A DNA stretch of 64,000 nucleotides from Camelus dromedarius. Lineage: Eukaryota. The stretch covers positions 45,818,001 through 45,882,000 of the forward strand of contig NC_087447.1 of the NCBI RefSeq assembly GCF_036321535.1, in the 5' to 3' direction. The translations under genes and the position numbers were made by a program. The notes beneath the pieces were generated by a model. It saw only the letters and a program-made list of their open reading frames with translations, had not been told where the DNA came from and ran no database searches. Positions 1,781 through 58,815 of this stretch are shown piece by piece (the stretch's first letter is position 1; every line of letters starts with the position of its first letter).

Positions 1781-2722
1781 TCAACCTGGTTTCCCACATA
1801 ATTTTGTAAGGATCAGACTTCTAATCTGCTGACTCTTCACCGAGTACACAACGGGATTCATTAGAGGGGGAACCAGAAGGAAAGTATCAGCTATGACGAC
1901 CCTAATAAGTGGGGAAACACTTTTGGCAAAGTGGTGAATAATAGCCAAGGTGACAATAGGCACATAGAAGATGAGCACAGCACAGATGTGGGAGATGCAA
2001 GTGTTGAGGACTTTGAGACAGCCCTTGTGTGAGGCAATGCTCAGAACAATTTTCAGGATCAGGACATAAGACACAGAAATACACACCAAGTCTAACATAG
2101 CCATTAGAGCCACAAGTAATCCATAGATGATATTGACCCTGTTATCAGAGCAGGCCAGCTTCATGACATCCTGATGGAGGCAGTAGGAGTGGCATAGAAG
2201 GCTTTTCTTACAGAATTTTAGCCTCTTTAGAATAAAGGGGAAAGGAAAGACCAATAGGATACTTTTCACAGCAAATGCAAGGCCAACTTTCATGACTCTG
2301 GCACTGGTCAGAATGGAGGTGTATCGCAGAGGGTTGTAGATAGCTATAAAGCGATCGATGGACATGATGAGAAGAACTGATGACTCCATAGCTGAGAATC
2401 CATGAATGAAAAACTCCTGAGCAAAGCAAGCACCAGGGGAAATTCTAGTGACGTTGAACAAGAAGATTCTCAGCATGGTTGGAAGGGAGGAGATGGACAG
2501 TCCCAGATCAGAAAAGGCCAGCATGGAGAGGAAATAGTACATAGGCTCATGCAGAGAGGTCTCTGTTTCTATGAAAAAGAGGATGGTGCAGTTCCCCAAG
2601 ATGGCAATGAGGTACATGAGGCACATTGGGATAGAGACCCAAATGTGAGCATGCTCCATGCCTGGGATCCCAGTCAGGAAGAAGGTAGAGATTTCCACTT
2701 CAGAGGTGTTAAAGATGGACAT
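1781..2722 (-). CDS. Class I olfactory receptor, OR51A subfamily (OR51A7-like), intact, 313 aa
   Basis: Single-exon ORF with OR motifs GN (TM1), LHEPMYYFLSML, MSIDRFIAIYNPLRY, HSYCLHQDVMKLAC, KVLNTCISHICAV, PPLMNPVVYSVK. N-terminal NTS sequon. Splice acceptor ccattgcag|gaag (AG at 2770-2769). Confidence 0.95.
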   Translation of the reverse strand: MSIFNTSEVEISTFFLTGIPGMEHAHIWVSIPMCLMYLIAILGNCTILFFIETETSLHEPMYYFLSMLAFSDLGLSISSLPTMLRIFLFNVTRISPGACFAQEFFIHGFSAMESSVLLIMSIDRFIAIYNPLRYTSILTSARVMKVGLAFAVKSILLVFPFPFILKRLKFCKKSLLCHSYCLHQDVMKLACSDNRVNIIYGLLVALMAMLDLVCISVSYVLILKIVLSIASHKGCLKVLNTCISHICAVLIFYVPIVTLAIIHHFAKSVSPLIRVVIADTFLLVPPLMNPVVYSVKSQQIRSLILTKLCGKPG

Positions 2723-13835: not shown

Positions 13836-14777
13836 CTAAACTTTCTGTTGCTTGAATTTCTTGAGGATTCTGTCACGAATCTGCTTGGTCTTGACACTGT
13901 AGACAATGGGGTTCATGAAGGGTGGCACCAGCAAGTAAACATTAGCCATTAGCACATGGACAATTGGGGAAGCATGCTTCCCATAGCGATGGATCATCGA
14001 TAACCCAATCATTGGTGTATAGAAGGTGAGTACAGCACAAATGTGGGAGATGCAGGTATTGAGGGCTTTCATCCTCTCTGTCATGGAGGCTATACTCAAC
14101 ACTGTGCCAAGGATGAGGATATAGGAGAGGAGGAGGAGCACTGAATCAAGTCCCATGGAGCAGATGACCACCATGAGGCCATAGATGCTGCTCACTCGAC
14201 GGCTGGATACAGTTGTCTTTATAAGATCTTGGTGCAGGCAGAAGGGGTAGGAGAGAACATTGACAGGATGATATTGGAGCTTCTTTAGGAGAAAGGAAGC
14301 TGGAAAGACCAGAGCCAAAGCCCTTCCAGCAATTACCAAAGCAATCCCAATGATTACATCATTGGTTAGAATGGTTGCATAGCGCAGGGGCTCTCGAATT
14401 GCTACCAAGCGGTCAAAGGCCATGGCCAACAGCACAGCTGACTCAATAATTGAGAAAACATGAATGAAGTACATCTGGACCAGGCAAGCATTGAAGGAGA
14501 TCTCCCGGGCATGGAACCAGAAGACACCTAACATGGTAGGCAAGGTTGTAGTGGATAGGCCCAGGTCAGTAAGTGCCAGCATTGATAGAAAGTAATACAT
14601 TGGTTGGTGGAGGGAACGCTCAGTTCTGATGATAAATAGAATGGTAATGTTCCCTGCAGTGGAGGTGGCGTAAACCAAGAAGATGGGGAGGGAAATCAAG
14701 CCATATCTGCTTTCAAGGCCTGAGAGGCCTGTCAGGAGGAAGCGAGGGTATAGGGCAGAGCTATTGAAGACAGACAT
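13836..14777 (-). CDS. Class I olfactory receptor, OR51 family (probably OR51P-like by synteny), intact, 313 aa
   Basis: LHQPMYYFLSML, MAFDRLVAIREPLRY, FCLHQD, KALNTCISHICAV, PPFMNPIVYSVKTKQIR. NSS sequon. Acceptor ctcccatatag (AG at 14803-14802). Confidence 0.93.
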   Translation of the reverse strand: MSVFNSSALYPRFLLTGLSGLESRYGLISLPIFLVYATSTAGNITILFIIRTERSLHQPMYYFLSMLALTDLGLSTTTLPTMLGVFWFHAREISFNACLVQMYFIHVFSIIESAVLLAMAFDRLVAIREPLRYATILTNDVIIGIALVIAGRALALVFPASFLLKKLQYHPVNVLSYPFCLHQDLIKTTVSSRRVSSIYGLMVVICSMGLDSVLLLLSYILILGTVLSIASMTERMKALNTCISHICAVLTFYTPMIGLSMIHRYGKHASPIVHVLMANVYLLVPPFMNPIVYSVKTKQIRDRILKKFKQQKV

Positions 14778-20977: not shown

Positions 20978-21925
20978 TTAAAGCTTCCTCCTTAGTCCAA
21001 ACTTGCGGAGAATTCCTAGACGAATCTGCTTTGTCCTGACACTGTAGACAACAGGGTTCAGCAATGGGGGGAGAAGCAAGTATATGTCAGCCATGAGGAT
21101 GTGGACAATGGGAGACAAATACTTCCCAAAGCGATGGACCATTGATACCCCAATAACTGGCACAAAGAAGATGAGTACCATGCAGATATGGGATACACAT
21201 GTGTTGAGTGCCTTTAGCTGTTCTTCACGAGATGCAATGCCCAGCACAGCCTTCAGAATTAGGACATAAGAAAGAAGTATAAAGACTGAATCCACACCCA
21301 GTGTGGCAATAACTACGCACAGTCCATAAACACTGTTGATGCTGGCATCCGAGCAGGATAGTTTCAGAACATCCTGGTGCAAACAGAAGGCGTGGGAGAG
21401 GGCATTGATGTGGCAGTAGTGATACTGTCTCAGTAGCAAAGGTGTGGGCAGTACAACTCCCATGCTTCTTAGCAAGCAGGTCAAACCAATCTTGCCTATT
21501 ACACTGTTGGTGAGGATGGTGGTGTAGTGCAGTGGACGGCAGATAGCAATGAAACGGTCAAAGGCCATGGCCAGCAGCACTGAGGACTCCAGGAATGTGA
21601 ATGTATGGATGAAGAAGAGCTGAACATAGCAAACACTTGCCCGAATCTCCCGAGCATCCAAACATAACACAGCAAGCATGGTGGGAAGTGTGGACAAGGA
21701 CAAACCTAGGTCAGTTAGTGCCAAGATGGAAAGAAAGTAATACATGGGCTGCTGGAGGGAAGACTCTGTCCAAATGACAGAGAGGATGCTAACATTACCA
21801 ATAAATGCTAACAAGTATGCAAGACAGAATGGGATTGAGAGCCAGGAATGAACATACTCTAGTCCAGGAAAACCCCTCAGAATAAATATAGGCTCCATAG
21901 TATCATTGTTACTCCAGACCACCAT
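20978..21925 (-). CDS. OR51L1: Olfactory receptor 51L1, intact, 315 aa (start at MVVWSNNDTM)
   Basis: Near-collinear with recalled human OR51L1 (EPIFILRGFPGLEYVHSWLS, HTFTFLESSVLLAMAFDR, VVIATLGVDS, VRTKQIRLGIL). Same length and same position next to MMP26. An in-frame ATG also exists at 22000. Confidence 0.93.
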   Translation of the reverse strand: MVVWSNNDTMEPIFILRGFPGLEYVHSWLSIPFCLAYLLAFIGNVSILSVIWTESSLQQPMYYFLSILALTDLGLSLSTLPTMLAVLCLDAREIRASVCYVQLFFIHTFTFLESSVLLAMAFDRFIAICRPLHYTTILTNSVIGKIGLTCLLRSMGVVLPTPLLLRQYHYCHINALSHAFCLHQDVLKLSCSDASINSVYGLCVVIATLGVDSVFILLSYVLILKAVLGIASREEQLKALNTCVSHICMVLIFFVPVIGVSMVHRFGKYLSPIVHILMADIYLLLPPLLNPVVYSVRTKQIRLGILRKFGLRRKL

Positions 21926-22496
21926 GGTGACCCTTGGCAAAGAGTGAGGAATATTTTCTGTTAGCCTTTTTTGTCCCTCAGAGTCATCCCTTGTGAGCAT
22001 AAGTAGAGCAGTCAGGATACATCTTTCCTCTAATCCCGCTGAGGAAGGAAGGAGTTACAGTTCTTAGGTAAGAAACATTTCCCGGTAGTAATGAGCACCA
22101 AATTCTAGAGCAAAAGTGTGTACTACAGAAATCTGGTCATTTCTGACAAGAACTTTGATGGCTTTGCATTGAGGACACTAAAAAATTTAAGCAGCAAAAG
22201 ATTAGAGAAAGAAATCTTTACTATGTATTATAAAATTACAAACAGAGAAAAGTCAGAGTAAATGTCTCTGGATTTGCATAAGCTTCCAGCCAGTAATGTT
22301 CTTGAGTTAACCTTGATTGTTTCTAGGCTATCTTTTAATTCCTGACAACAGAATTTGTCCTAAGGACTCAACATAATTTCGCTTCCTACTTATTTAATAC
22401 TTATACATACTTATATAATAATTTATAATGTTAAAAATATTTAATATTTTAATAAAATTCAGTACCCATTATATGAAAAGAGGGCATGAAAAAGAA

Positions 22497-31981: not shown

Positions 31982-32010
31982 TTAGGGCTTTTTAGATGAA
32001 CATCTTTCTC
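31982..32010 (-). CDS. MMP26: MMP26 exon 6 coding part GERCSSKKP*
   Basis: Acceptor tccccataag|GA after a 78-nt intron; similar to recalled human GEKCSSDIP*. Confidence 0.88.
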
Positions 32011-35000
32011 CTTATGGGGACAGAAGAAAACAGTAAACTCCAAGTGGAATTTCCTGCCCAGATCCCCGCCCTTTCGGCAGGCACAGACCATAGAGTTGCT
32101 GGATTCTTTGGATATCGTCAACACCAAGGTGGAAGGTTCTAAGGTCCCGATACATGTATCTGGGGTACATTATGGAGTTCCAATTCCTGGAGTGCTGCAG
32201 GCCCAGAGAGTGACCTAGCTCATGAATGGCAACCAGGAACAGATTAAATCCTGAAAAGGAACAGACAAAAGGATAAAAATTATATATGCATAGGAAAGGC
32301 AGAAAGTCTGTAAAAAAAAAAAAAAAAAAAGGAAGAAAAAAGAGAACAGAAAAGGAAGAAAGAGCAAATGTAAGAGAGCAAAGAGAGGTGGACAGAATCT
32401 AGGTGAGAAACAAAATGGCAAATTAAAATGAACAAACTGGAAGTGAACAGAAGTTGAGAGAATGATAAATGGAAACAAAGGGATAAGAGAGAGAATGCAC
32501 AATATGATGATGTTTATCATAGAAGTATCTTTGTTCAGAAGTGATCCCACCTCCCCCCACTCATTAGAAGACCCAATTCCTCAGCTAAATCATCCCGCCT
32601 CACCCTGGCCACTCTGAATCCTGCCTTCTACCTTCTTCACAATATGCTAGGCCCAAATGGAGACCATCAATACCAACCCCCAAGCTCCCGGAGAGTTCTA
32701 GCACTCCCACCAGTTCAGGTCTTTACCTCTGTATGAAGTCGACCAGTGTTCTCCCTTGTCAAAGTGGATAGTTCCTGCAGCTCCAGAATTTGGTAAAAAG
32801 GCATGGCCTAAGACACCACCTGGCCCATCAAATGGACAACCATCTCCATGGGCTGTGAACGACAGAAACTATTGCCACAATAGGGTTTCGCGGGCAAGGG
32901 CAGGAATGGTCTTAGGTAAGCCTCAGTGCCTCAGTGCCTCATGCACGCTGCAACTGCTACTGCTGGAGAGGTGAGAGGGCTGAGGCACCATCTATGTAGA
33001 AAAATAGGATGGGGCCAAAAATCTAGCTACTCCCTATCTTCTGTGGCAAAAAAAAAAGAAAAGAAAGGTGGAAGAGACTGAGTGAAGGTTGTATGTTAAA
33101 CACAAAGATCTCTTCCCAAAATGGAGGAAAAGAGGGGAAGGGAACTTAGGCACTGCAGGCTTTCATAAATAGGTTTGATCAACTCAGTAGAATTTCAACA
33201 GATTTGAGAGCCACACAACTCTCTTTTGACAGGAGAATGTGCAATAGGCTTTCCCTCACTTTATTCACACAACAGTGCATCCTCCAGTCCCCTATCTACT
33301 ACCTCATTGTTCCAAAAATATCTTTCCTGGTATAGGTTTATTGATTTCCATTAGGGTTTTGCCTTCCTTTTTTCTCAGCAGCTAGATTAGGCGGACTAGG
33401 TTTTTGTTTCAGAACTGAGACCATTTGCCTTTTACATGGGACACCATACCCTCCCTCCCATGTTATTTTCTAACCCAGCTCCCAGAAAGAAATCTTGATG
33501 TCTGCATCTTCACTCTCCACTTGCTGGAAGATCAAGGGGGTCACATTGCTCCAAATGGAAACTGCATCATGTATAATGTTTTTCACTGTGGATTGCTTCA
33601 GATCATTTGGGTAATTGATAATCCTGAAAGAAGAAATCTTTAAGTAGAACAGCTCAAAGGTATAGGAATAATCCAGCTCTAAAAAGGCATGACTCTGCTT
33701 TGGAGAAAATCACTTAATACTTTGGGGCCTTATTTTACTATCCGAAAAGAGAATAAACCCCAGACAAACTGAATCAAAAGCCCAGGAAATTAAACCTGCA
33801 AAATACAGATGTTTAAGAATTTTTACAAATTCTCCACATTGTTCTTATCTACACTAAGTCCTGAGAATGACAGCCCTATAGGGTAATTGTGAGGAAAAAA
33901 ATCATGATGGACTCCATTGAAATGTATGGCATTTCATATAGTTTAGTATTGCTTTGTTTTGGCTATCCCTAATAGCCAAAATGCTTAGGATCCCCAGTAG
34001 AATAAGTAACATGGATGTGGAGCAAAAATACATCAAATTATATCTTAACACCCCCCTCCCCCTCCCCACCCCCACCACTTACACACAGGGGGATAAAAGT
34101 ATGTTTAGTTAAGGGAAGAATGATAGGTTCACAGCCAAAGAATAGTAGTTAGGCTCCACTTCCAAAAGAGATGATCTGGGGAAGCTAGAATGAGAACTGA
34201 GAGAATTGCCTTTTCTGAGGAAGACTGGGGCTTTGGAGAGACTGCCAGCGAAAGCAGAAGACAGTAGAGGTGCCTCCAGGAGGGACATTGCAGGCAGTCA
34301 CCCCGCTCATCCCTCCAGGCCGTAACCACAAGCACCTGTAGGTCAGAGTGTGCTTATTCCATTTAGAACTTGCTGCAGAGGCGGAGTCGTGATCAACATC
34401 AGTAACTCCACAGCGGGGCTGGTGTAGCACAGTCAGCGTTTGCTCCTCCCTCAGGTTTGCCTCGTTCAGATGGAACTGCGGCAGGAGCTGTATCTTTTCC
34501 CCCTGGGTAAGGAGTGATGGTTCTTTCTTGGTCAAGAAAAACTGATGGAAATAGTCCTGGGTGGAAGATTGGGAATGAGGAGTACTTAGAGACAGCAAGG
34601 ACAGACTCACAGCATCAGTAGCCCAGGCATAGCCTCCTTTGAAGGCCTGGGAAGGATGGTGCTTTGTCTCTCTGGTCTTCTTAAATGTCTTATTCTCAGC
34701 TGAATGATGGCAATGATGCCCGATTCTCCTGTCACTCAGTAGGTAACATTAAACATGGGTGATAAAATTAAAATGGCCTGGATAACCCATTAAAACTTCT
34801 CTGAAAATAAAGCATTAAATTTTCAGAACAGAGAGGCCCAAAGGCAAAGGTTGTCAGGGTAGGGAAAAACTACCCCCCTCCCCATCTTGAGTTCCTATCG
34901 CTGGACTAATAATAAAATTAACACGAGACAGATTAACAGGAGAAAAAGAAATACATTCTAGTTCATGCACATGGGGTCCCATAGAAATGGAACTTAAGAA

Positions 35001-36608
35001 GTGGCCAAAGCAGGCAGCTTTTATACTTCTCAGACAAAGAAATGATATATTTGGGAGGAATTGACAGGACAAAGAAACTTAGGTTTGGGTGCCCAACTGG
35101 TGAAGAATCTAAACAGAGTTTGGGCTTGGGGTAGTAAAGTTAAAAAGTAACAGCGTTTGTTTATCTAGGACTCTTGGCCTGGATTCCCTCTTTGGTGGTA
35201 AGGGTGTCCTTCTACCTCCAGATACAGGGAGCGCACCTTTTATATGAGAGATTTATTTCCTGCTTTCAGGGAGACAGAAAGGAAGATCAGGGTGTCCCTC
35301 TTGGGTCGGCCATTTCTTAAGCAACTTTAATTCAAAATAATCATTGTGCCATTGAGGCACATTTTGGGACAGTCCATTCTGGGCTCCAGAAAGGTCATGA
35401 AGGTATAGATGGGAATTGCTCAGGGAAAATGACCTCTGATCTTTCTCATCGATTGAAGTTTTCTCAGTCAGGACAGAATCTATGACTCCTAGGATATAGA
35501 ATTTAGCTGCTTCTGTATACTCAGTCCATTTGCATTTACATATCAATTCCATTAAAATACTTCTAAAAATCTCATTCTTCACCTACTCCCTGTCCACACT
35601 GACTTTCTTAACAATCCAGTGAACTAAACTTCAACCTCCAGGGCAGGGAGTGAAGGTGGGGAGGCACATTGTATTATAGTAACTCTTTCTATATCTTTAT
35701 TTGAACTCTAGCTGGGCTGAAAGTACTTTAAGGGCATTGCTCATGTCTAATGAAATTTGGTCTATACTACAATTCTTATAAATCATACTTGATCTTTGAT
35801 TGATATTTGAGATTGATTGATTTTTGAGTTTTGTATAAAATTGCATTCTTATTATACCTTTAGTCTATTGTGACCTTGGCTGGGCACTCAGAGGCACATG
35901 ATTTACCAAATTTTTCTAGGTTAGATATTAGCAGGAAATTTTACCAGGTCCCTGAATGATCATAAAGCAGATGACTGAAACCAGTTATAAAGAGTTTTAG
36001 GTGTTTTGAATGCTAGAAAGTTTTGGAACAAATGCAGTTTCTTGAGGAATTTGAAAGTGTTTGGTAGACAGGTTTAAGAGATTTCTCAGTCAATAGGAAA
36101 AACACATCAGTCCATTTGAATCACTTCCCCAGATCCCTCACCACCTAGTAGGCTCAGAGATCCAAACCTCTGAGTGTACACTTTGCCATATGGAATAATA
36201 GAAGAGTGAGACATGAACATTTGCACTGAATTATTCATTAGGTACCATAAGCAAAATTTATTGAACTCTTACCTGGAAGAGTAATTTGTATAAGCACCAT
36301 TCTTTTACCAGCCCCCACAAATGATTTCATTTATTTTAAAATCAGAAGAAAAGAAATGAACTTAGAGATTGAAGAGAATGATTTACTATGAAACAGTAAA
36401 TATATTTGTCTTTATACCATGAAGCAATGTGTATACATATAACACACATCTGGGAGAAGAACCCACCATAGTCATAATGTGATAATGCGGTCCTGATTAA
36501 CCCACCTACCTTAGCAAAGTCCAGTCCTTTAAGGTCTGTAGCAGGGGGCACTGGGAAGGCAAGGCACCATGGCAGGAAAATTGTAGCTTTGAAGATGTCA
36601 GGCTGCAT
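31982..36608 (-). CDS. MMP26: Matrix metalloproteinase-26 (matrilysin-2/endometase), six coding exons, intact, 261 aa
   Basis: Exons 36608-36510 (99), 34556-34336 (221), 33623-33475 (149), 32852-32727 (126), 32250-32089 (162), 32010-31982 (29) = 786 nt, all GT-AG, phases compatible, no stop. Signal peptide, PRCGVTD switch, [11 protein letters not shown] zinc motif, SIMYP Met-turn, no hemopexin domain. Collinear with recalled human MMP26 ([26 protein letters not shown], ...LYGE.CSS). Confidence 0.97.
32089..32250 (-). CDS. MMP26: MMP26 exon 5 (catalytic zinc motif and Met-turn)
   Basis: [54 protein letters not shown]; acceptor ccttttcag|GA; donor G|GTCTGT. Confidence 0.97.
32727..32852 (-). 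CDS. MMP26: MMP26 exon 4 [42 protein letters not shown]
   Basis: Acceptor ttcacag|CC; donor G|GTAAAG; structural Zn/Ca ligands H158, D160, H173, H186, D165, E191. Confidence 0.96.
33475..33623 (-). CDS. MMP26: MMP26 exon 3 [49 protein letters not shown]
   Basis: Acceptor ctttcag|G; donor G|GTTAGA; 149 nt, the usual MMP exon-3 size. Confidence 0.96.
34336..34556 (-). CDS. MMP26: MMP26 exon 2 (propeptide, cysteine switch PRCGVTD)
   Basis: Acceptor ttccacccag|GAC; donor AG|GTGCTT; DYFHQFF...[10 protein letters not shown]. Confidence 0.96.
34852..35391 (-). mobile_element. Solo ERV1-type LTR (family-C related) in MMP26 intron 1, sense to MMP26
   Basis: Perfect 4-bp TSD aggt (34848-34851 and 35392-35395). 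TATAAAA on minus at 35019-35025. 3' end homologous to the LTR at 27523-28067. Confidence 0.85.
36510..36608 (-). CDS. MMP26: MMP26 coding exon 1 (signal peptide) [33 protein letters not shown]
   Basis: Kozak gccATG; donor AAG|GTAGGT. Confidence 0.93.
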
Positions 36609-36665
36609 GGCAAAGCTCATTTCTCCCCAGCCTGAATTCATGTACCAAGCATGGATCAGCAGGAC

Positions 36666-56900: not shown

Positions 56901-57870
56901 GACAAATGCAATAACTTCTGGGATTTTATACTAAAATCCTTCTACTTTCAAATATCCACTCTCTGGTAAGTACTCAGATATCTTCATCTATTTTGCTTTC
57001 ATTTTACTGCTTTTTTTTTTTTTTTTTTTGTAAATCAACCACATGGAACTTCATACAGAGCAGGAGACACTTCCAAAATTCATGTATCTAGGAAAATTGT
57101 TCCTTTCAGAGACTATACAAATAAACTATTTACCTTTAGGGGAATTGTTCTTCAACAGAATTCAAATTCTCCTAAATTGTGACACTTACCACTTCAGGTT
57201 ATTGTTCTCTTGTCAGCACTCCACAAATGGTCACAAATTCCAGGCCAGGAGAAAATTAGACATAATTTGTCAGTAATCTCTGCAGTGACTGCCCTTACAA
57301 ATACAAAAATAATTTGAAAATCAAGGGAGTTTTTAAAAGATACTTAAATAACCAACAATCTAGCAGGGGATAGCACTAAGAGTAGTTTGGTTTTGAGAAG
57401 ACCATACTTTTGTGAGAATTCCAACAAGTAGGAAGAAATTAAATTTTGAGACTCCTCTGCCTTCACATAGTGTCATTCTGGAAATCATATATTCTAACCA
57501 ACATCTTATCTAGAATGTGAAAGCAAGAACTCATAGAGGAGTCCGGATTAATTGACTAGGGTCTACTAGTATGTTACTAGTAGAAAAAGAAACCAGCTTT
57601 TCATCTGATTGCAAAATATATTCCTGGTTTCTCTATAGGAAAAAAATGGCCAGAAGAACTTCTTTAAATCTATGATCCAGGAAATTCCAGTCTAAAGTGA
57701 AAGCCACTTCTCACTATATAGTCACATAAATAACTTGCTCTATCAAAAGACAGTTGAAAAAACCCAGAAACTTCAGAACTGCTTTTTTTCTACTAAATTT
57801 CCAGATATTCACATTTTATCTACTCAAGACTTCCTGTGATTCGCTGCAGAGCCCTCTAAATTAATTGATC

Positions 57871-58815
57871 ATGTCCATTATCAACATGTCACATGTTGAA
57901 ATCACCACATTCTTCTTGGTTGGGATGCCAAGGCTGGAATATGCACACATCTGGATCTCTATTCCTGTCTGCAGCATGTACCTTGTTGCTATTCTGGGAA
58001 ACTGCACCATCCTTTTCATCATCAAGACAGAACCCTCACTGCACGAACCCATGTACTATTTCCTTTCCATGTTGGCCCTGTCTGACATGGGCTTGTCCTT
58101 TTCCTCTCTTCCCACTATGTTGAGGATCTTCTTATTCAAGGCTTCTGAAATCTCTGCTAATGCCTGCTTTGCCCAGGAATTCTTCATCCATGGATTCACA
58201 GCACTGGAGTCCTCAGTGCTCCTGATCATGTCATTTGACCGCTTCCTCGCCATCCACAACCCTCTGAGATACAGCTCCATTCTTAAAACAGTCAGAGTTG
58301 CCCAGATAGGAGTGGTATGCTTTTTCAAGAGCTTCCTCCTGGTTCTTCCTTTCCCCTTCACTTTGAGAAGGTTGAAATATTGTAAGAAAAGCCAATTATC
58401 CCATTCCTACTGTCTCCACCAGGATGTCATGAAGTTGGCCTGCTCTGACAACCGAATTGATGTCATTTATGGCTTTTTGGGGGCACTCTGCCTTATGGTA
58501 GATTTTATGCTCATTGCTGTATCTTACATCCTGATCCTCAAGACTGTGCTGGGAAAAAACGCATCCCAAAAGGAGCAGCTCAAGGCCCTCAATACTTGTG
58601 TTTCACACATCTGTGCAGTGACCATCTTCTACCTGCCCATCATCAACCTCGCCATTGTCCATCGCTTTGCCCGGCATGTCTCTCCCCTCTTCAATTTTCT
58701 TATGGCAAATGTTCTTCTACTTGTGCCTCCACTGATGAATCCCATTGTGTACTGTGTGAAAACTAGGCAGATTAGAGTAAGAGTGGTAGCAAAATTATGT
58801 CAGAAGCAAATATAA
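57871..58815 (+). CDS. OR51A4: Olfactory receptor OR51A4/OR51A2-like, intact, 314 aa from the second ATG (316 aa from 57865)
   Basis: MSIINMSHVEITTFFLVGMP, LHEPMYYFLSML, MSFDRFLAIHNPLRY, SDNRIDVIYGF.GALCLMVDF, HRFARHVSPL closely track recalled human OR51A4/A2. Acceptor cgctgcag at 57849. Confidence 0.92.
   Translation: MSIINMSHVEITTFFLVGMPRLEYAHIWISIPVCSMYLVAILGNCTILFIIKTEPSLHEPMYYFLSMLALSDMGLSFSSLPTMLRIFLFKASEISANACFAQEFFIHGFTALESSVLLIMSFDRFLAIHNPLRYSSILKTVRVAQIGVVCFFKSFLLVLPFPFTLRRLKYCKKSQLSHSYCLHQDVMKLACSDNRIDVIYGFLGALCLMVDFMLIAVSYILILKTVLGKNASQKEQLKALNTCVSHICAVTIFYLPIINLAIVHRFARHVSPLFNFLMANVLLLVPPLMNPIVYCVKTRQIRVRVVAKLCQKQI

What the first reader, a model, noticed from the sequence alone, without database searches (positions are those of the whole stretch)
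34398..34418. Cysteine switch is PRCGVTD: canonical Arg81 instead of the human His81, plus Pro85>Thr
Seen: codon 81 is CGC (34413-34415) and codon 85 is ACT. Established: human MMP26 is known for its atypical PHCGVPD switch and unconventional latency, while Arg is the MMP consensus (PRCGxPD). Inference: Arg is ancestral and the primate His arose by one CpG transition (CGC>CAC), so the defining oddity of MMP26 may be lineage-specific. This orthologue may be a conventionally latent zymogen, although Thr85 departs from consensus.
Basis: partly seen in the sequence, partly recalled or inferred. Interest (0 to 1): 0.72.

Follow-up and report, generated by a model that had tools for sequence, protein, structure and literature searches.

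The report
Camel MMP26 keeps ancestral cysteine switch
This is the latency ("cysteine switch") motif of an intact camel MMP26 protease gene; its arginine is the ordinary ancestral state, whereas the human histidine is a recent African-ape change at a mutation-prone CpG that has been hit independently in at least six other mammal lineages.

Summary
On the minus strand, 34418-34398 reads CCC CGC TGT GGA GTT ACT GAT, which is PRCGVTD. These are codons 80-86 of an intact six-exon, 261-aa MMP26 gene. Its product is 100% identical to the annotated Camelus MMP26.

- **Arg81 is ancestral.** It is found in marsupials, Afrotheria, Xenarthra, lagomorphs, lemurs, New and Old World monkeys, camelids, perissodactyls, one bat and the African pangolin.
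- **The human His comes from one CpG transition.** Macaque, rhino and camel have CGC; gorilla has CAC.
- **His is not a primate trait.** Among primates only Homo, Pan and Gorilla have it, plus the tarsier separately. Orangutan and lorisiforms have Cys (TGC).
- **His also arose outside primates**, in caniform carnivores, Asian pangolins and Pteropus.
- On a 59-species tree residue 81 needs seven changes. All six lineages checked at the DNA level show single transitions at the same CpG.
- **Thr85 is not a camel oddity.** It is shared across the sampled Laurasiatheria, and PRCGVTD is the native switch motif of MMP-28.

Whether camel pro-MMP26 is conventionally latent remains untested. I put it at about 0.55, because Arg81, Pro85 and Asp86 all vary repeatedly within MMP26. 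The camel motif itself is ordinary; the recurrent hits on codon 81 are the modestly interesting result. An earlier scan note (s1-191706) had already called this gene.

The parts
34398..34418 (-). Cysteine-switch motif PRCGVTD, codons 80-86 of MMP26. Arg81 is CGC at 34415-34413, Cys82 is TGT at 34412-34410, Thr85 is ACT at 34403-34401 and Asp86 is GAT at 34400-34398.
   Evidence: Direct reading; codon numbering from the assembled CDS.
36510..36608 (-). MMP26 exon 1: start ATG at 36608-36606, signal peptide and start of the propeptide, codons 1-33. Two further in-frame ATGs lie upstream at 36620 and 36641.
   Evidence: donor site AAG|gtaggt.
34336..34556 (-). MMP26 exon 2: propeptide including the cysteine switch and the start of the catalytic domain, codons 34-106 plus 2 nt.
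   Evidence: 96% identical to alpaca MMP26. Exon-2 words are held by RNA-Seq runs.
33475..33623 (-). MMP26 exon 3 (catalytic domain).
   Evidence: Pfam PF00413, E=1.5e-10.
32727..32852 (-). MMP26 exon 4 (catalytic domain, structural Zn/Ca region).
32089..32250 (-). MMP26 exon 5, with the catalytic zinc motif [11 protein letters not shown] (32224-32192) and the Met-turn (M226).
   Evidence: PF00413, E=5.3e-19.
31982..32010 (-). MMP26 exon 6: last 8 codons and the stop TAA at 31984-31982.
   Evidence: The C-terminus ...[11 protein letters not shown] parallels the human ...LYGEKCSSD.P ending.

Best explanation
The 21 bases encode the cysteine-switch segment of the propeptide of an intact, probably expressed MMP26 (matrilysin-2/endometase) gene of a Camelus genome, lying among olfactory-receptor genes. 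Shown: Arg81 (CGC) is the retained ancestral therian state. Thr85 (ACT) is a substitution shared by the sampled Laurasiatheria, not a camel novelty. The human PHCG motif is a derived state of the Homo-Pan-Gorilla clade, produced by one G>A transition at the CpG of codon 81. The same CpG was hit independently in the tarsier, caniform carnivores, Asian pangolins and Pteropus (to CAC, His) and in the orangutan and lorisiforms (to TGC, Cys). Inferred: camel pro-MMP26 most likely keeps latency in the usual matrixin way. In that mechanism the switch loop lies backwards in the active-site cleft and the Cys82 thiol is the fourth ligand of the catalytic zinc held by His208, His212 and His218. Arg81 and Asp86 brace the loop, and removal of the propeptide activates the enzyme. 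I put about 0.9 on the descriptive and evolutionary part and about 0.55 on conventional latency.
For: Sequence and gene model. Matrixin domain: PF00413, E=6.5e-58 on the identical protein P0138. Zinc motif. All residues invariant across 128 MMPs are present in the camel protein: C82, H158, D160, H173, H186, H208, E209, H212, M226 (H218 is nearly invariant, >=90%, and also present). Identity 261/261 to annotated Camelus MMP26. Motif survey of 64 orthologues. ML tree with motif columns removed follows the mammal phylogeny and needs 7 changes at residue 81, with every basal lineage Arg. Codons: CGC in camel, macaque and rhino; CGG in Dromiciops; CAC in gorilla, fox, Manis and Pteropus; TGC in orangutan and slow loris. 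Codon 85: ACT in camel, rhino and Pteropus; CCT/CCC in primates; AAT in fox and GCT in Manis, each one step from ACT. PRCGVTD is the switch motif of MMP-28 (PMC7794804). The AF2 model has three propeptide helices and a beta bridge at residues 81-82; the best structural matches are the proenzymes 1SLM, 9CSX, proMMP-9 and 1SU3 over 224-233 columns. RNA-Seq runs from two studies labelled reproductive system hold 0.42-1.00 of exon-2 words but only 0.12-0.27 of the whole 4.6-kb gene. General switch mechanism: PMC11170211.
Against: Latency was not tested. The AF2 propeptide has low confidence (pLDDT 40-67) and its fit to proenzymes has rmsd 7-8 A, so the model cannot show Cys82-Zn geometry. Within MMP26 the switch residues other than Cys82 and Gly83 vary repeatedly: R81 in 7 events; D86 to E in equids and lorisiforms and to A in lemurs; P85 to T, N, A or R. 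In contrast, 79 of 79 motif-bearing paralogues keep PRCG..D. This suggests the motif may matter less for MMP26 in general, even where Arg survives. The tarsier protein is flagged low quality by its source.
Confidence: 0.8

Rival explanations
1. Despite the canonical Arg81, camel pro-MMP26 is not held latent by a conventional cysteine switch. On this view the switch has been functionally dispensable in the whole MMP26 lineage, so its flanking residues drift, and latency (if any) rests on other propeptide contacts or on intracellular retention.
For: There are seven independent changes at R81, plus changes at D86 in three lineages and at P85 in several, against 79/79 conserved in paralogues. MMP26 has no hits from ruminants, pigs, cetaceans, felids or rodents, which would fit a weakly constrained gene. 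Reviews say the mechanism by which human pro-MMP-26 stays latent is not understood (PMC5621753). The propeptide is poorly predicted.
Against: Cys82 and Gly83 are invariant in all 59 orthologues and Pro80 is kept in 55 of 59, so the core of the switch is under constraint. The exact heptapeptide is used by MMP-28. Reviews attribute the human defect specifically to the Arg>His exchange (PMC3102199, PMC2715019), which the camel lacks.
Confidence: 0.35
2. The camel gene is an unexpressed or decaying relic, so the motif has no functional meaning.
For: MMP26 appears to be missing from many mammal groups. Camelids have lost the nearly invariant Thr66 of the N64 glycosylation sequon and carry P235L. 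Splicing was not verified.
Against: The ORF is intact at 261 codons with six canonical GT-AG exon junctions. All family-invariant catalytic and structural residues are present. There are only 3 amino-acid differences from alpaca. RNA-Seq runs hold exon 2.
Confidence: 0.07
3. His81 is ancestral for placentals, or for Boreoeutheria, and Arg was regained repeatedly.
For: His is widespread: 17 of 59 species in five clades.
Against: All marsupials, Afrotheria, Xenarthra and lagomorphs, and the basal members of every His-bearing group (Smutsia, Miniopterus, Old World monkeys), carry Arg. This reading would need many more changes, each a non-CpG A>G reversal.
Confidence: 0.02

Closest known systems
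Human MMP-26 (matrilysin-2, endometase), P0121
   Same: Orthologue. Both are 261 aa with the same minimal architecture: signal peptide, propeptide and catalytic domain, with no hemopexin domain. They share codon numbering and a location among olfactory-receptor genes. Identity is 68%.
   Different: Human has PHCGVPD and camel has PRCGVTD. Reviews describe the human switch as non-functional because of His81. Camel also lacks the N64-x-T and N221 glycosylation sequons that are used in human (PMC9067285).
MMP-28 (epilysin) cysteine switch
   Same: The switch heptapeptide PRCGVTD is identical (PMC7794804).
   Different: MMP-28 is a different paralogue. By my recollection it is furin-activated and has a hemopexin domain. 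Only the motif was compared; its sequence was not examined here.
Pro-stromelysin-1 (proMMP-3, PDB 1SLM) and proMMP-10 (9CSX)
   Same: These are the best sequence and fold matches among solved structures (E=1.7e-55; Foldseek E=6e-25 over 224-232 columns). They share the three-helix propeptide plus catalytic domain and the canonical switch mechanism (PMC11170211).
   Different: About 43% identity. They carry the PRCGVPD consensus with Pro at the position of camel Thr85. The predicted camel propeptide is low-confidence.
Matrilysin-1 (MMP-7) zymogen, PDB 2MZE
   Same: The other minimal-domain MMP. It aligns over residues 30-260 (E=7e-53).
   Different: A separate paralogue that is conventionally secreted and latent.

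Membership tests
Matrixins (peptidase family M10A, MMPs) | Peptidase_M10 catalytic domain | tested here: met
   PF00413, E=6.5e-58, residues 98-253 of P0138, which is identical to the window protein. Single exons also hit.
Matrixins (peptidase family M10A, MMPs) | HExxHxxGxxH zinc-binding motif and Met-turn | tested here: met
   [11 protein letters not shown] at 32224-32192. H208, E209, H212 and M226 are invariant and H218 nearly invariant (>=90%) in the 128-sequence alignment.
Matrixins (peptidase family M10A, MMPs) | Propeptide cysteine switch PRCGxPD | tested here: met
   PRCGVTD at codons 80-86. Six of seven consensus positions match. The Thr variant equals the MMP-28 motif.
MMP26 orthologous group | Closest relatives are annotated MMP26 proteins, and it groups with them on a tree | tested here: met
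   261/261 identity to Camelus MMP26. Top hits are all MMP26. It sits with alpaca inside the Laurasiatheria on the orthologue tree.
MMP26 orthologous group | Minimal domain structure (no hemopexin domain, about 260 aa) and a position inside an olfactory-receptor cluster | tested here: met
   261 aa with a single Pfam domain. Four intact 7tm_4 ORFs lie in the same window. That the human gene lies among OR51 genes at 11p15 is my own knowledge, not tested.
MMP26 orthologous group | PHCGxxD motif, often quoted as the hallmark of MMP-26 | tested here: not met
   Camel has Arg. The survey shows His is not a property of the orthologous group (39 Arg, 17 His, 3 Cys), so it should not be treated as defining.
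Conventionally latent cysteine-switch zymogens | Cys thiol coordinated to the catalytic zinc in the proenzyme, released on activation (APMA or proteolysis) | not testable with these tools
   The AF2 output gives no coordinates or metal, and the propeptide pLDDT is 40-67.
Conventionally latent cysteine-switch zymogens | Arg and Asp of the motif present to brace the switch loop | tested here: met
   R81 and D86 are present. Their bracing role is from my recollection of proMMP structures and was not verified here.
Conventionally latent cysteine-switch zymogens | Second proline of PRCGxPD | tested here: not met
   Thr85 (ACT). The position also varies in 6 of 79 paralogues (A, S, L, Q) and is Thr in MMP-28, so it is not strictly required.

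The most novel reading that the evidence does not exclude
Codon 81 of MMP26 acts as a natural, recurrent 'switch-breaker'. The seven or more independent CpG-driven losses of Arg81 would then be convergent, selected conversions of a latent secreted zymogen into an unconventionally regulated enzyme, not mere drift. The losses are in African apes, orangutan, lorisiforms, tarsier, caniform carnivores, Asian pangolins and Pteropus. Arg-keeping species such as camel and macaque would preserve the ancestral latent form. Closely related pairs (gorilla/macaque, Manis/Smutsia, Pteropus/Miniopterus) would then give ready-made natural experiments.
Probability: 0.15. Interest if true: 0.6.

Novelty: new member of a known kind. 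Interest (0 to 1): 0.35.

Why it matters
Reviews describe MMP-26 as the only MMP without a working cysteine switch and attribute this to a His next to the switch Cys (PMC3102199, PMC4964549, PMC5621753). The survey here shows that this is a property of the human, chimpanzee and gorilla protein and of a few unrelated lineages, not of the gene as a whole. Macaques, marmosets, rabbits, horses and camels carry the consensus Arg. Results on activation and latency should therefore not be transferred between human and animal MMP-26 without checking residue 81. The Arg-bearing and His-bearing sister species offer natural controls. I found no paper in the searched library that reports this distribution. 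It can, however, be read directly from public annotations, so the novelty is modest. The camel motif itself is ordinary.

Tried and rejected
1. **Marchenko et al. 2002 (JBC 277:18967).** This is the primary paper on the human PHCG motif, but it is not held in the library. I therefore could not check what a His81-to-Arg mutant did, and I relied only on how reviews summarise the paper.
2. **Literature searches.** Searches for His81, H81R or Cys82 with MMP-26, and for MMP26 with camel, found nothing relevant. A search for mutagenesis or salt-bridge literature on PRCGVPD was also unproductive.
3. **First AF2 run.** With 38 sequences it gave mean pLDDT 61 and an unusable propeptide. The second run with 128 sequences improved only the catalytic domain. 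Neither can address Cys-Zn geometry.
5. **Missing DNA.** The look-up of encoding contigs returned no DNA for tarsier, elephant or armadillo because the files were too large. Their codons are unknown.
6. **Rejected readings.** His as the ancestral state, an assembly error at codon 81, and the gene being a pseudogene are treated under rival explanations.
7. **Masked sequence.** Runs of N in the window were left untouched.

Full report
**Observation**

Reading the minus strand of 34100-34700 gives ...CAC CAG CCC CGC TGT GGA GTT ACT GAT GTT GAT..., which translates to [14 protein letters not shown] occupies 34418-34416, CGC 34415-34413, TGT 34412-34410, ACT 34403-34401 and GAT 34400-34398.

**Gene model**

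A six-frame scan found a matrixin zinc motif, [11 protein letters not shown], at 32224-32192 on the same strand. Open stretches matching a small MMP lie in between. From the splice signals I assembled six exons:
- exon 1: 36608-36510
- exon 2: 34556-34336
- exon 3: 33623-33475
- exon 4: 32852-32727
- exon 5: 32250-32089
- exon 6: 32010-31982

All introns are GT-AG. The CDS is 786 nt and 261 codons, ending in TAA. In this model Arg is codon 81 and Thr is codon 85. Exons 3-5 each hit Pfam Peptidase_M10, and the whole protein hits it at E=6.5e-58.

**Identity of the gene and the genome**

Searching the exon-2 peptide found annotated MMP26 proteins, with alpaca best at 96%. Listing that cluster and comparing it with my translation showed 261/261 identity to Camelus dromedarius MMP26 (P0138) and to the Camelus isoform X2 core. 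There are three differences from alpaca.

The window is therefore a Camelus genome, and the gene is already annotated in public databases. It lies among four intact olfactory-receptor ORFs. An earlier scan note (s1-191706) reached the same gene call.

**Distribution of residue 81**

A profile search returned MMP26 orthologues from about 37 sequence clusters. Listing the cluster members extended this to 64 species. The aligned motif falls into three groups:
- **Arg:** five marsupials, eight afrotherians, two xenarthrans, two lagomorphs, five lemurs, four New World monkeys, six Old World monkeys, both camelids, four perissodactyls, Miniopterus, and the African pangolin Smutsia.
- **His:** Homo, Pan, Gorilla; the tarsier; four canids, five pinnipeds and mink; two Asian Manis species; and Pteropus.
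- **Cys:** orangutan (LCCGVPD), and slow loris and galago (PCCGVPE).

A partial Phyllostomus protein has a degenerate PCYE at this place.

I built a maximum-likelihood tree of 59 orthologues with the motif columns removed. It follows the accepted mammal phylogeny and needs seven changes at residue 81, most simply five to His and two to Cys. Every basal lineage carries Arg.

**Codons**

DNA was obtained for nine other species. Codon 81 reads:
- CGC in camel, macaque and white rhinoceros, and CGG in Dromiciops
- CAC in gorilla, arctic fox, Manis javanica and Pteropus
- TGC in orangutan and slow loris

Every derived state is a single transition at the one CpG. G>A gives His and C>T gives Cys. The orangutan Cys and the African-ape His must be separate hits on CGC, because TGC and CAC differ at two positions.

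But the event is specific to African apes, not to primates, and it is one of at least seven such events.

**Contrast with paralogues**

Among 83 other MMPs in the same search results (matrilysin, MMP-12, MMP-13-like and others, from fish to mammals), all 79 with a recognisable motif keep P-R-C-G-x-x-D. Within MMP26, only Cys82 and Gly83 are invariant:
- Pro80 is kept in 55 of 59.
- Arg81 is kept in 39 of 59.
- Position 85 is P, T, N, R or A.
- Asp86 is Glu in equids and lorisiforms and Ala in lemurs.

The flanks of the switch therefore look less constrained in MMP26 than elsewhere in the family.

**Thr85**

ACT is shared by camel, rhino and Pteropus. Thr is present in 14 species: camelids, perissodactyls, bats, pinnipeds and mink. 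The canid AAT and the pangolin GCT are each one step from ACT, while primates have CCT or CCC.

This points to a single Pro>Thr change early in the Laurasiatheria, not a camel feature. The heptapeptide PRCGVTD is also the cysteine-switch motif quoted for MMP-28 (PMC7794804). Thr at this position is therefore compatible with a working switch in another MMP.

**Mechanism**

In matrixins the propeptide is a three-helix bundle. An extended loop from it runs backwards through the active-site cleft, and the switch cysteine binds the catalytic zinc and displaces the catalytic water. Removal of the propeptide activates the enzyme (PMC11170211).

Reviews state that human MMP-26 is the exception, and they attribute the loss of the switch to the His next to the Cys (PMC3102199, PMC4964549, PMC5621753, PMC2715019).

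The camel protein has P80, R81, C82, G83 and D86 together with all the catalytic and structural ligands. An AF2 model built on 128 sequences gave three results:
- The catalytic domain was confident, with pLDDT above 90.
- It predicted three propeptide helices (26-40, 51-57, 70-77) and a beta bridge at residues 81-82.
- Its best structural matches were proenzymes: 1SLM, 9CSX, proMMP-9 and 1SU3.

However, the propeptide pLDDT is only 40-67 and the rmsd to the proenzymes is 7-8 A. The model is therefore only consistent with a conventional zymogen and is not evidence for one. I rate conventional latency at about 0.55. The main rival, at about 0.35, is that the switch flanks are dispensable throughout MMP26.

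**Expression**

Fourteen DNA-type runs hold 0.96-0.98 of the gene's sampled words. RNA-Seq runs labelled 'reproductive system' come from two studies. They hold 1.00, 0.79, 0.47 and 0.42 of the exon-2 words. The three of them that also appeared in the whole-gene search hold only 0.12-0.27 of the 4.6-kb gene.

This pattern suggests spliced mRNA, and it would fit the endometrial expression known for the human gene.

**Literature and novelty**

A 2022 survey of primate MMPs reports positive selection and a human-chimpanzee Ka/Ks above 1 for MMP-26, but it does not mention the switch motif (PMC9085222). MMP26 was also among the genes listed in the Nielsen et al. human-chimpanzee selection scan (PMC1088278). 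No searched paper describes the Arg/His/Cys distribution.

**Verdict**

The camel motif is the ordinary, ancestral, already annotated state. The modestly new point is that the textbook oddity of MMP-26 is a recent change in African apes at a repeatedly hit CpG.

Noticed in passing
window 1781-2722 (-), 13836-14777 (-), 20978-22000 (-), 57865-58815 (+): Four intact ORFs of 313-340 aa are olfactory receptors (Pfam 7tm_4, E=1e-108 to 1e-119). MMP26 therefore sits inside an olfactory-receptor cluster.
   Followed up: partly
window 34458-34466 (-), codons 64-66: Camelids read N-E-A where 55 of 57 other orthologues have Thr66. This destroys the N64-x-T glycosylation sequon that is used in human MMP-26 (PMC9067285). 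The human N221 sequon is also absent (camel reads SRNWNSI).
   Followed up: partly
window 32141-32143 (-), codon 235: A camelid-specific P235L (CTT) occurs at a position that is Pro in 52 of 56 other orthologues. With T66A, it is one of only two camelid-specific departures from a 90% or higher consensus.
   Followed up: no
window 36606-36641 (-): Three in-frame ATGs lie at 36641, 36620 and 36608. Older NCBI models (272 aa) start at the first and the current 261-aa model starts at the third, which aligns with the human start.
   Followed up: no
window 34479-34481 (-), codon 59: Camelids have Pro59 (LLPQF) where most orthologues and at least 90% of 128 MMPs have Gln. Pinnipeds, mink and Smutsia also have Pro here. 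By my recollection this is close to the reported autolytic activation site of human MMP-26; that was not verified.
   Followed up: no
search results (no window coordinates): No MMP26 from ruminants, pigs, cetaceans, felids or rodents appeared among the ranked hits. Camelids were the only artiodactyls. This hints at repeated gene loss.
   Followed up: no
L002:1868-1873 (orangutan) and P0035 (Phyllostomus): Orangutan carries two changes side by side, P80L (CTC) and R81C (TGC), giving adjacent cysteines (LCCG). The partial Phyllostomus protein reads PCYE, so the switch Cys itself is lost there and the gene may be decaying.
   Followed up: partly
   Followed up: no
runs X15, X17, X19, X28: RNA-Seq libraries labelled 'reproductive system metagenome', from two studies, hold camel MMP26 exon 2. 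This may indicate uterine or reproductive-tract expression, as for human endometase.
   Followed up: partly
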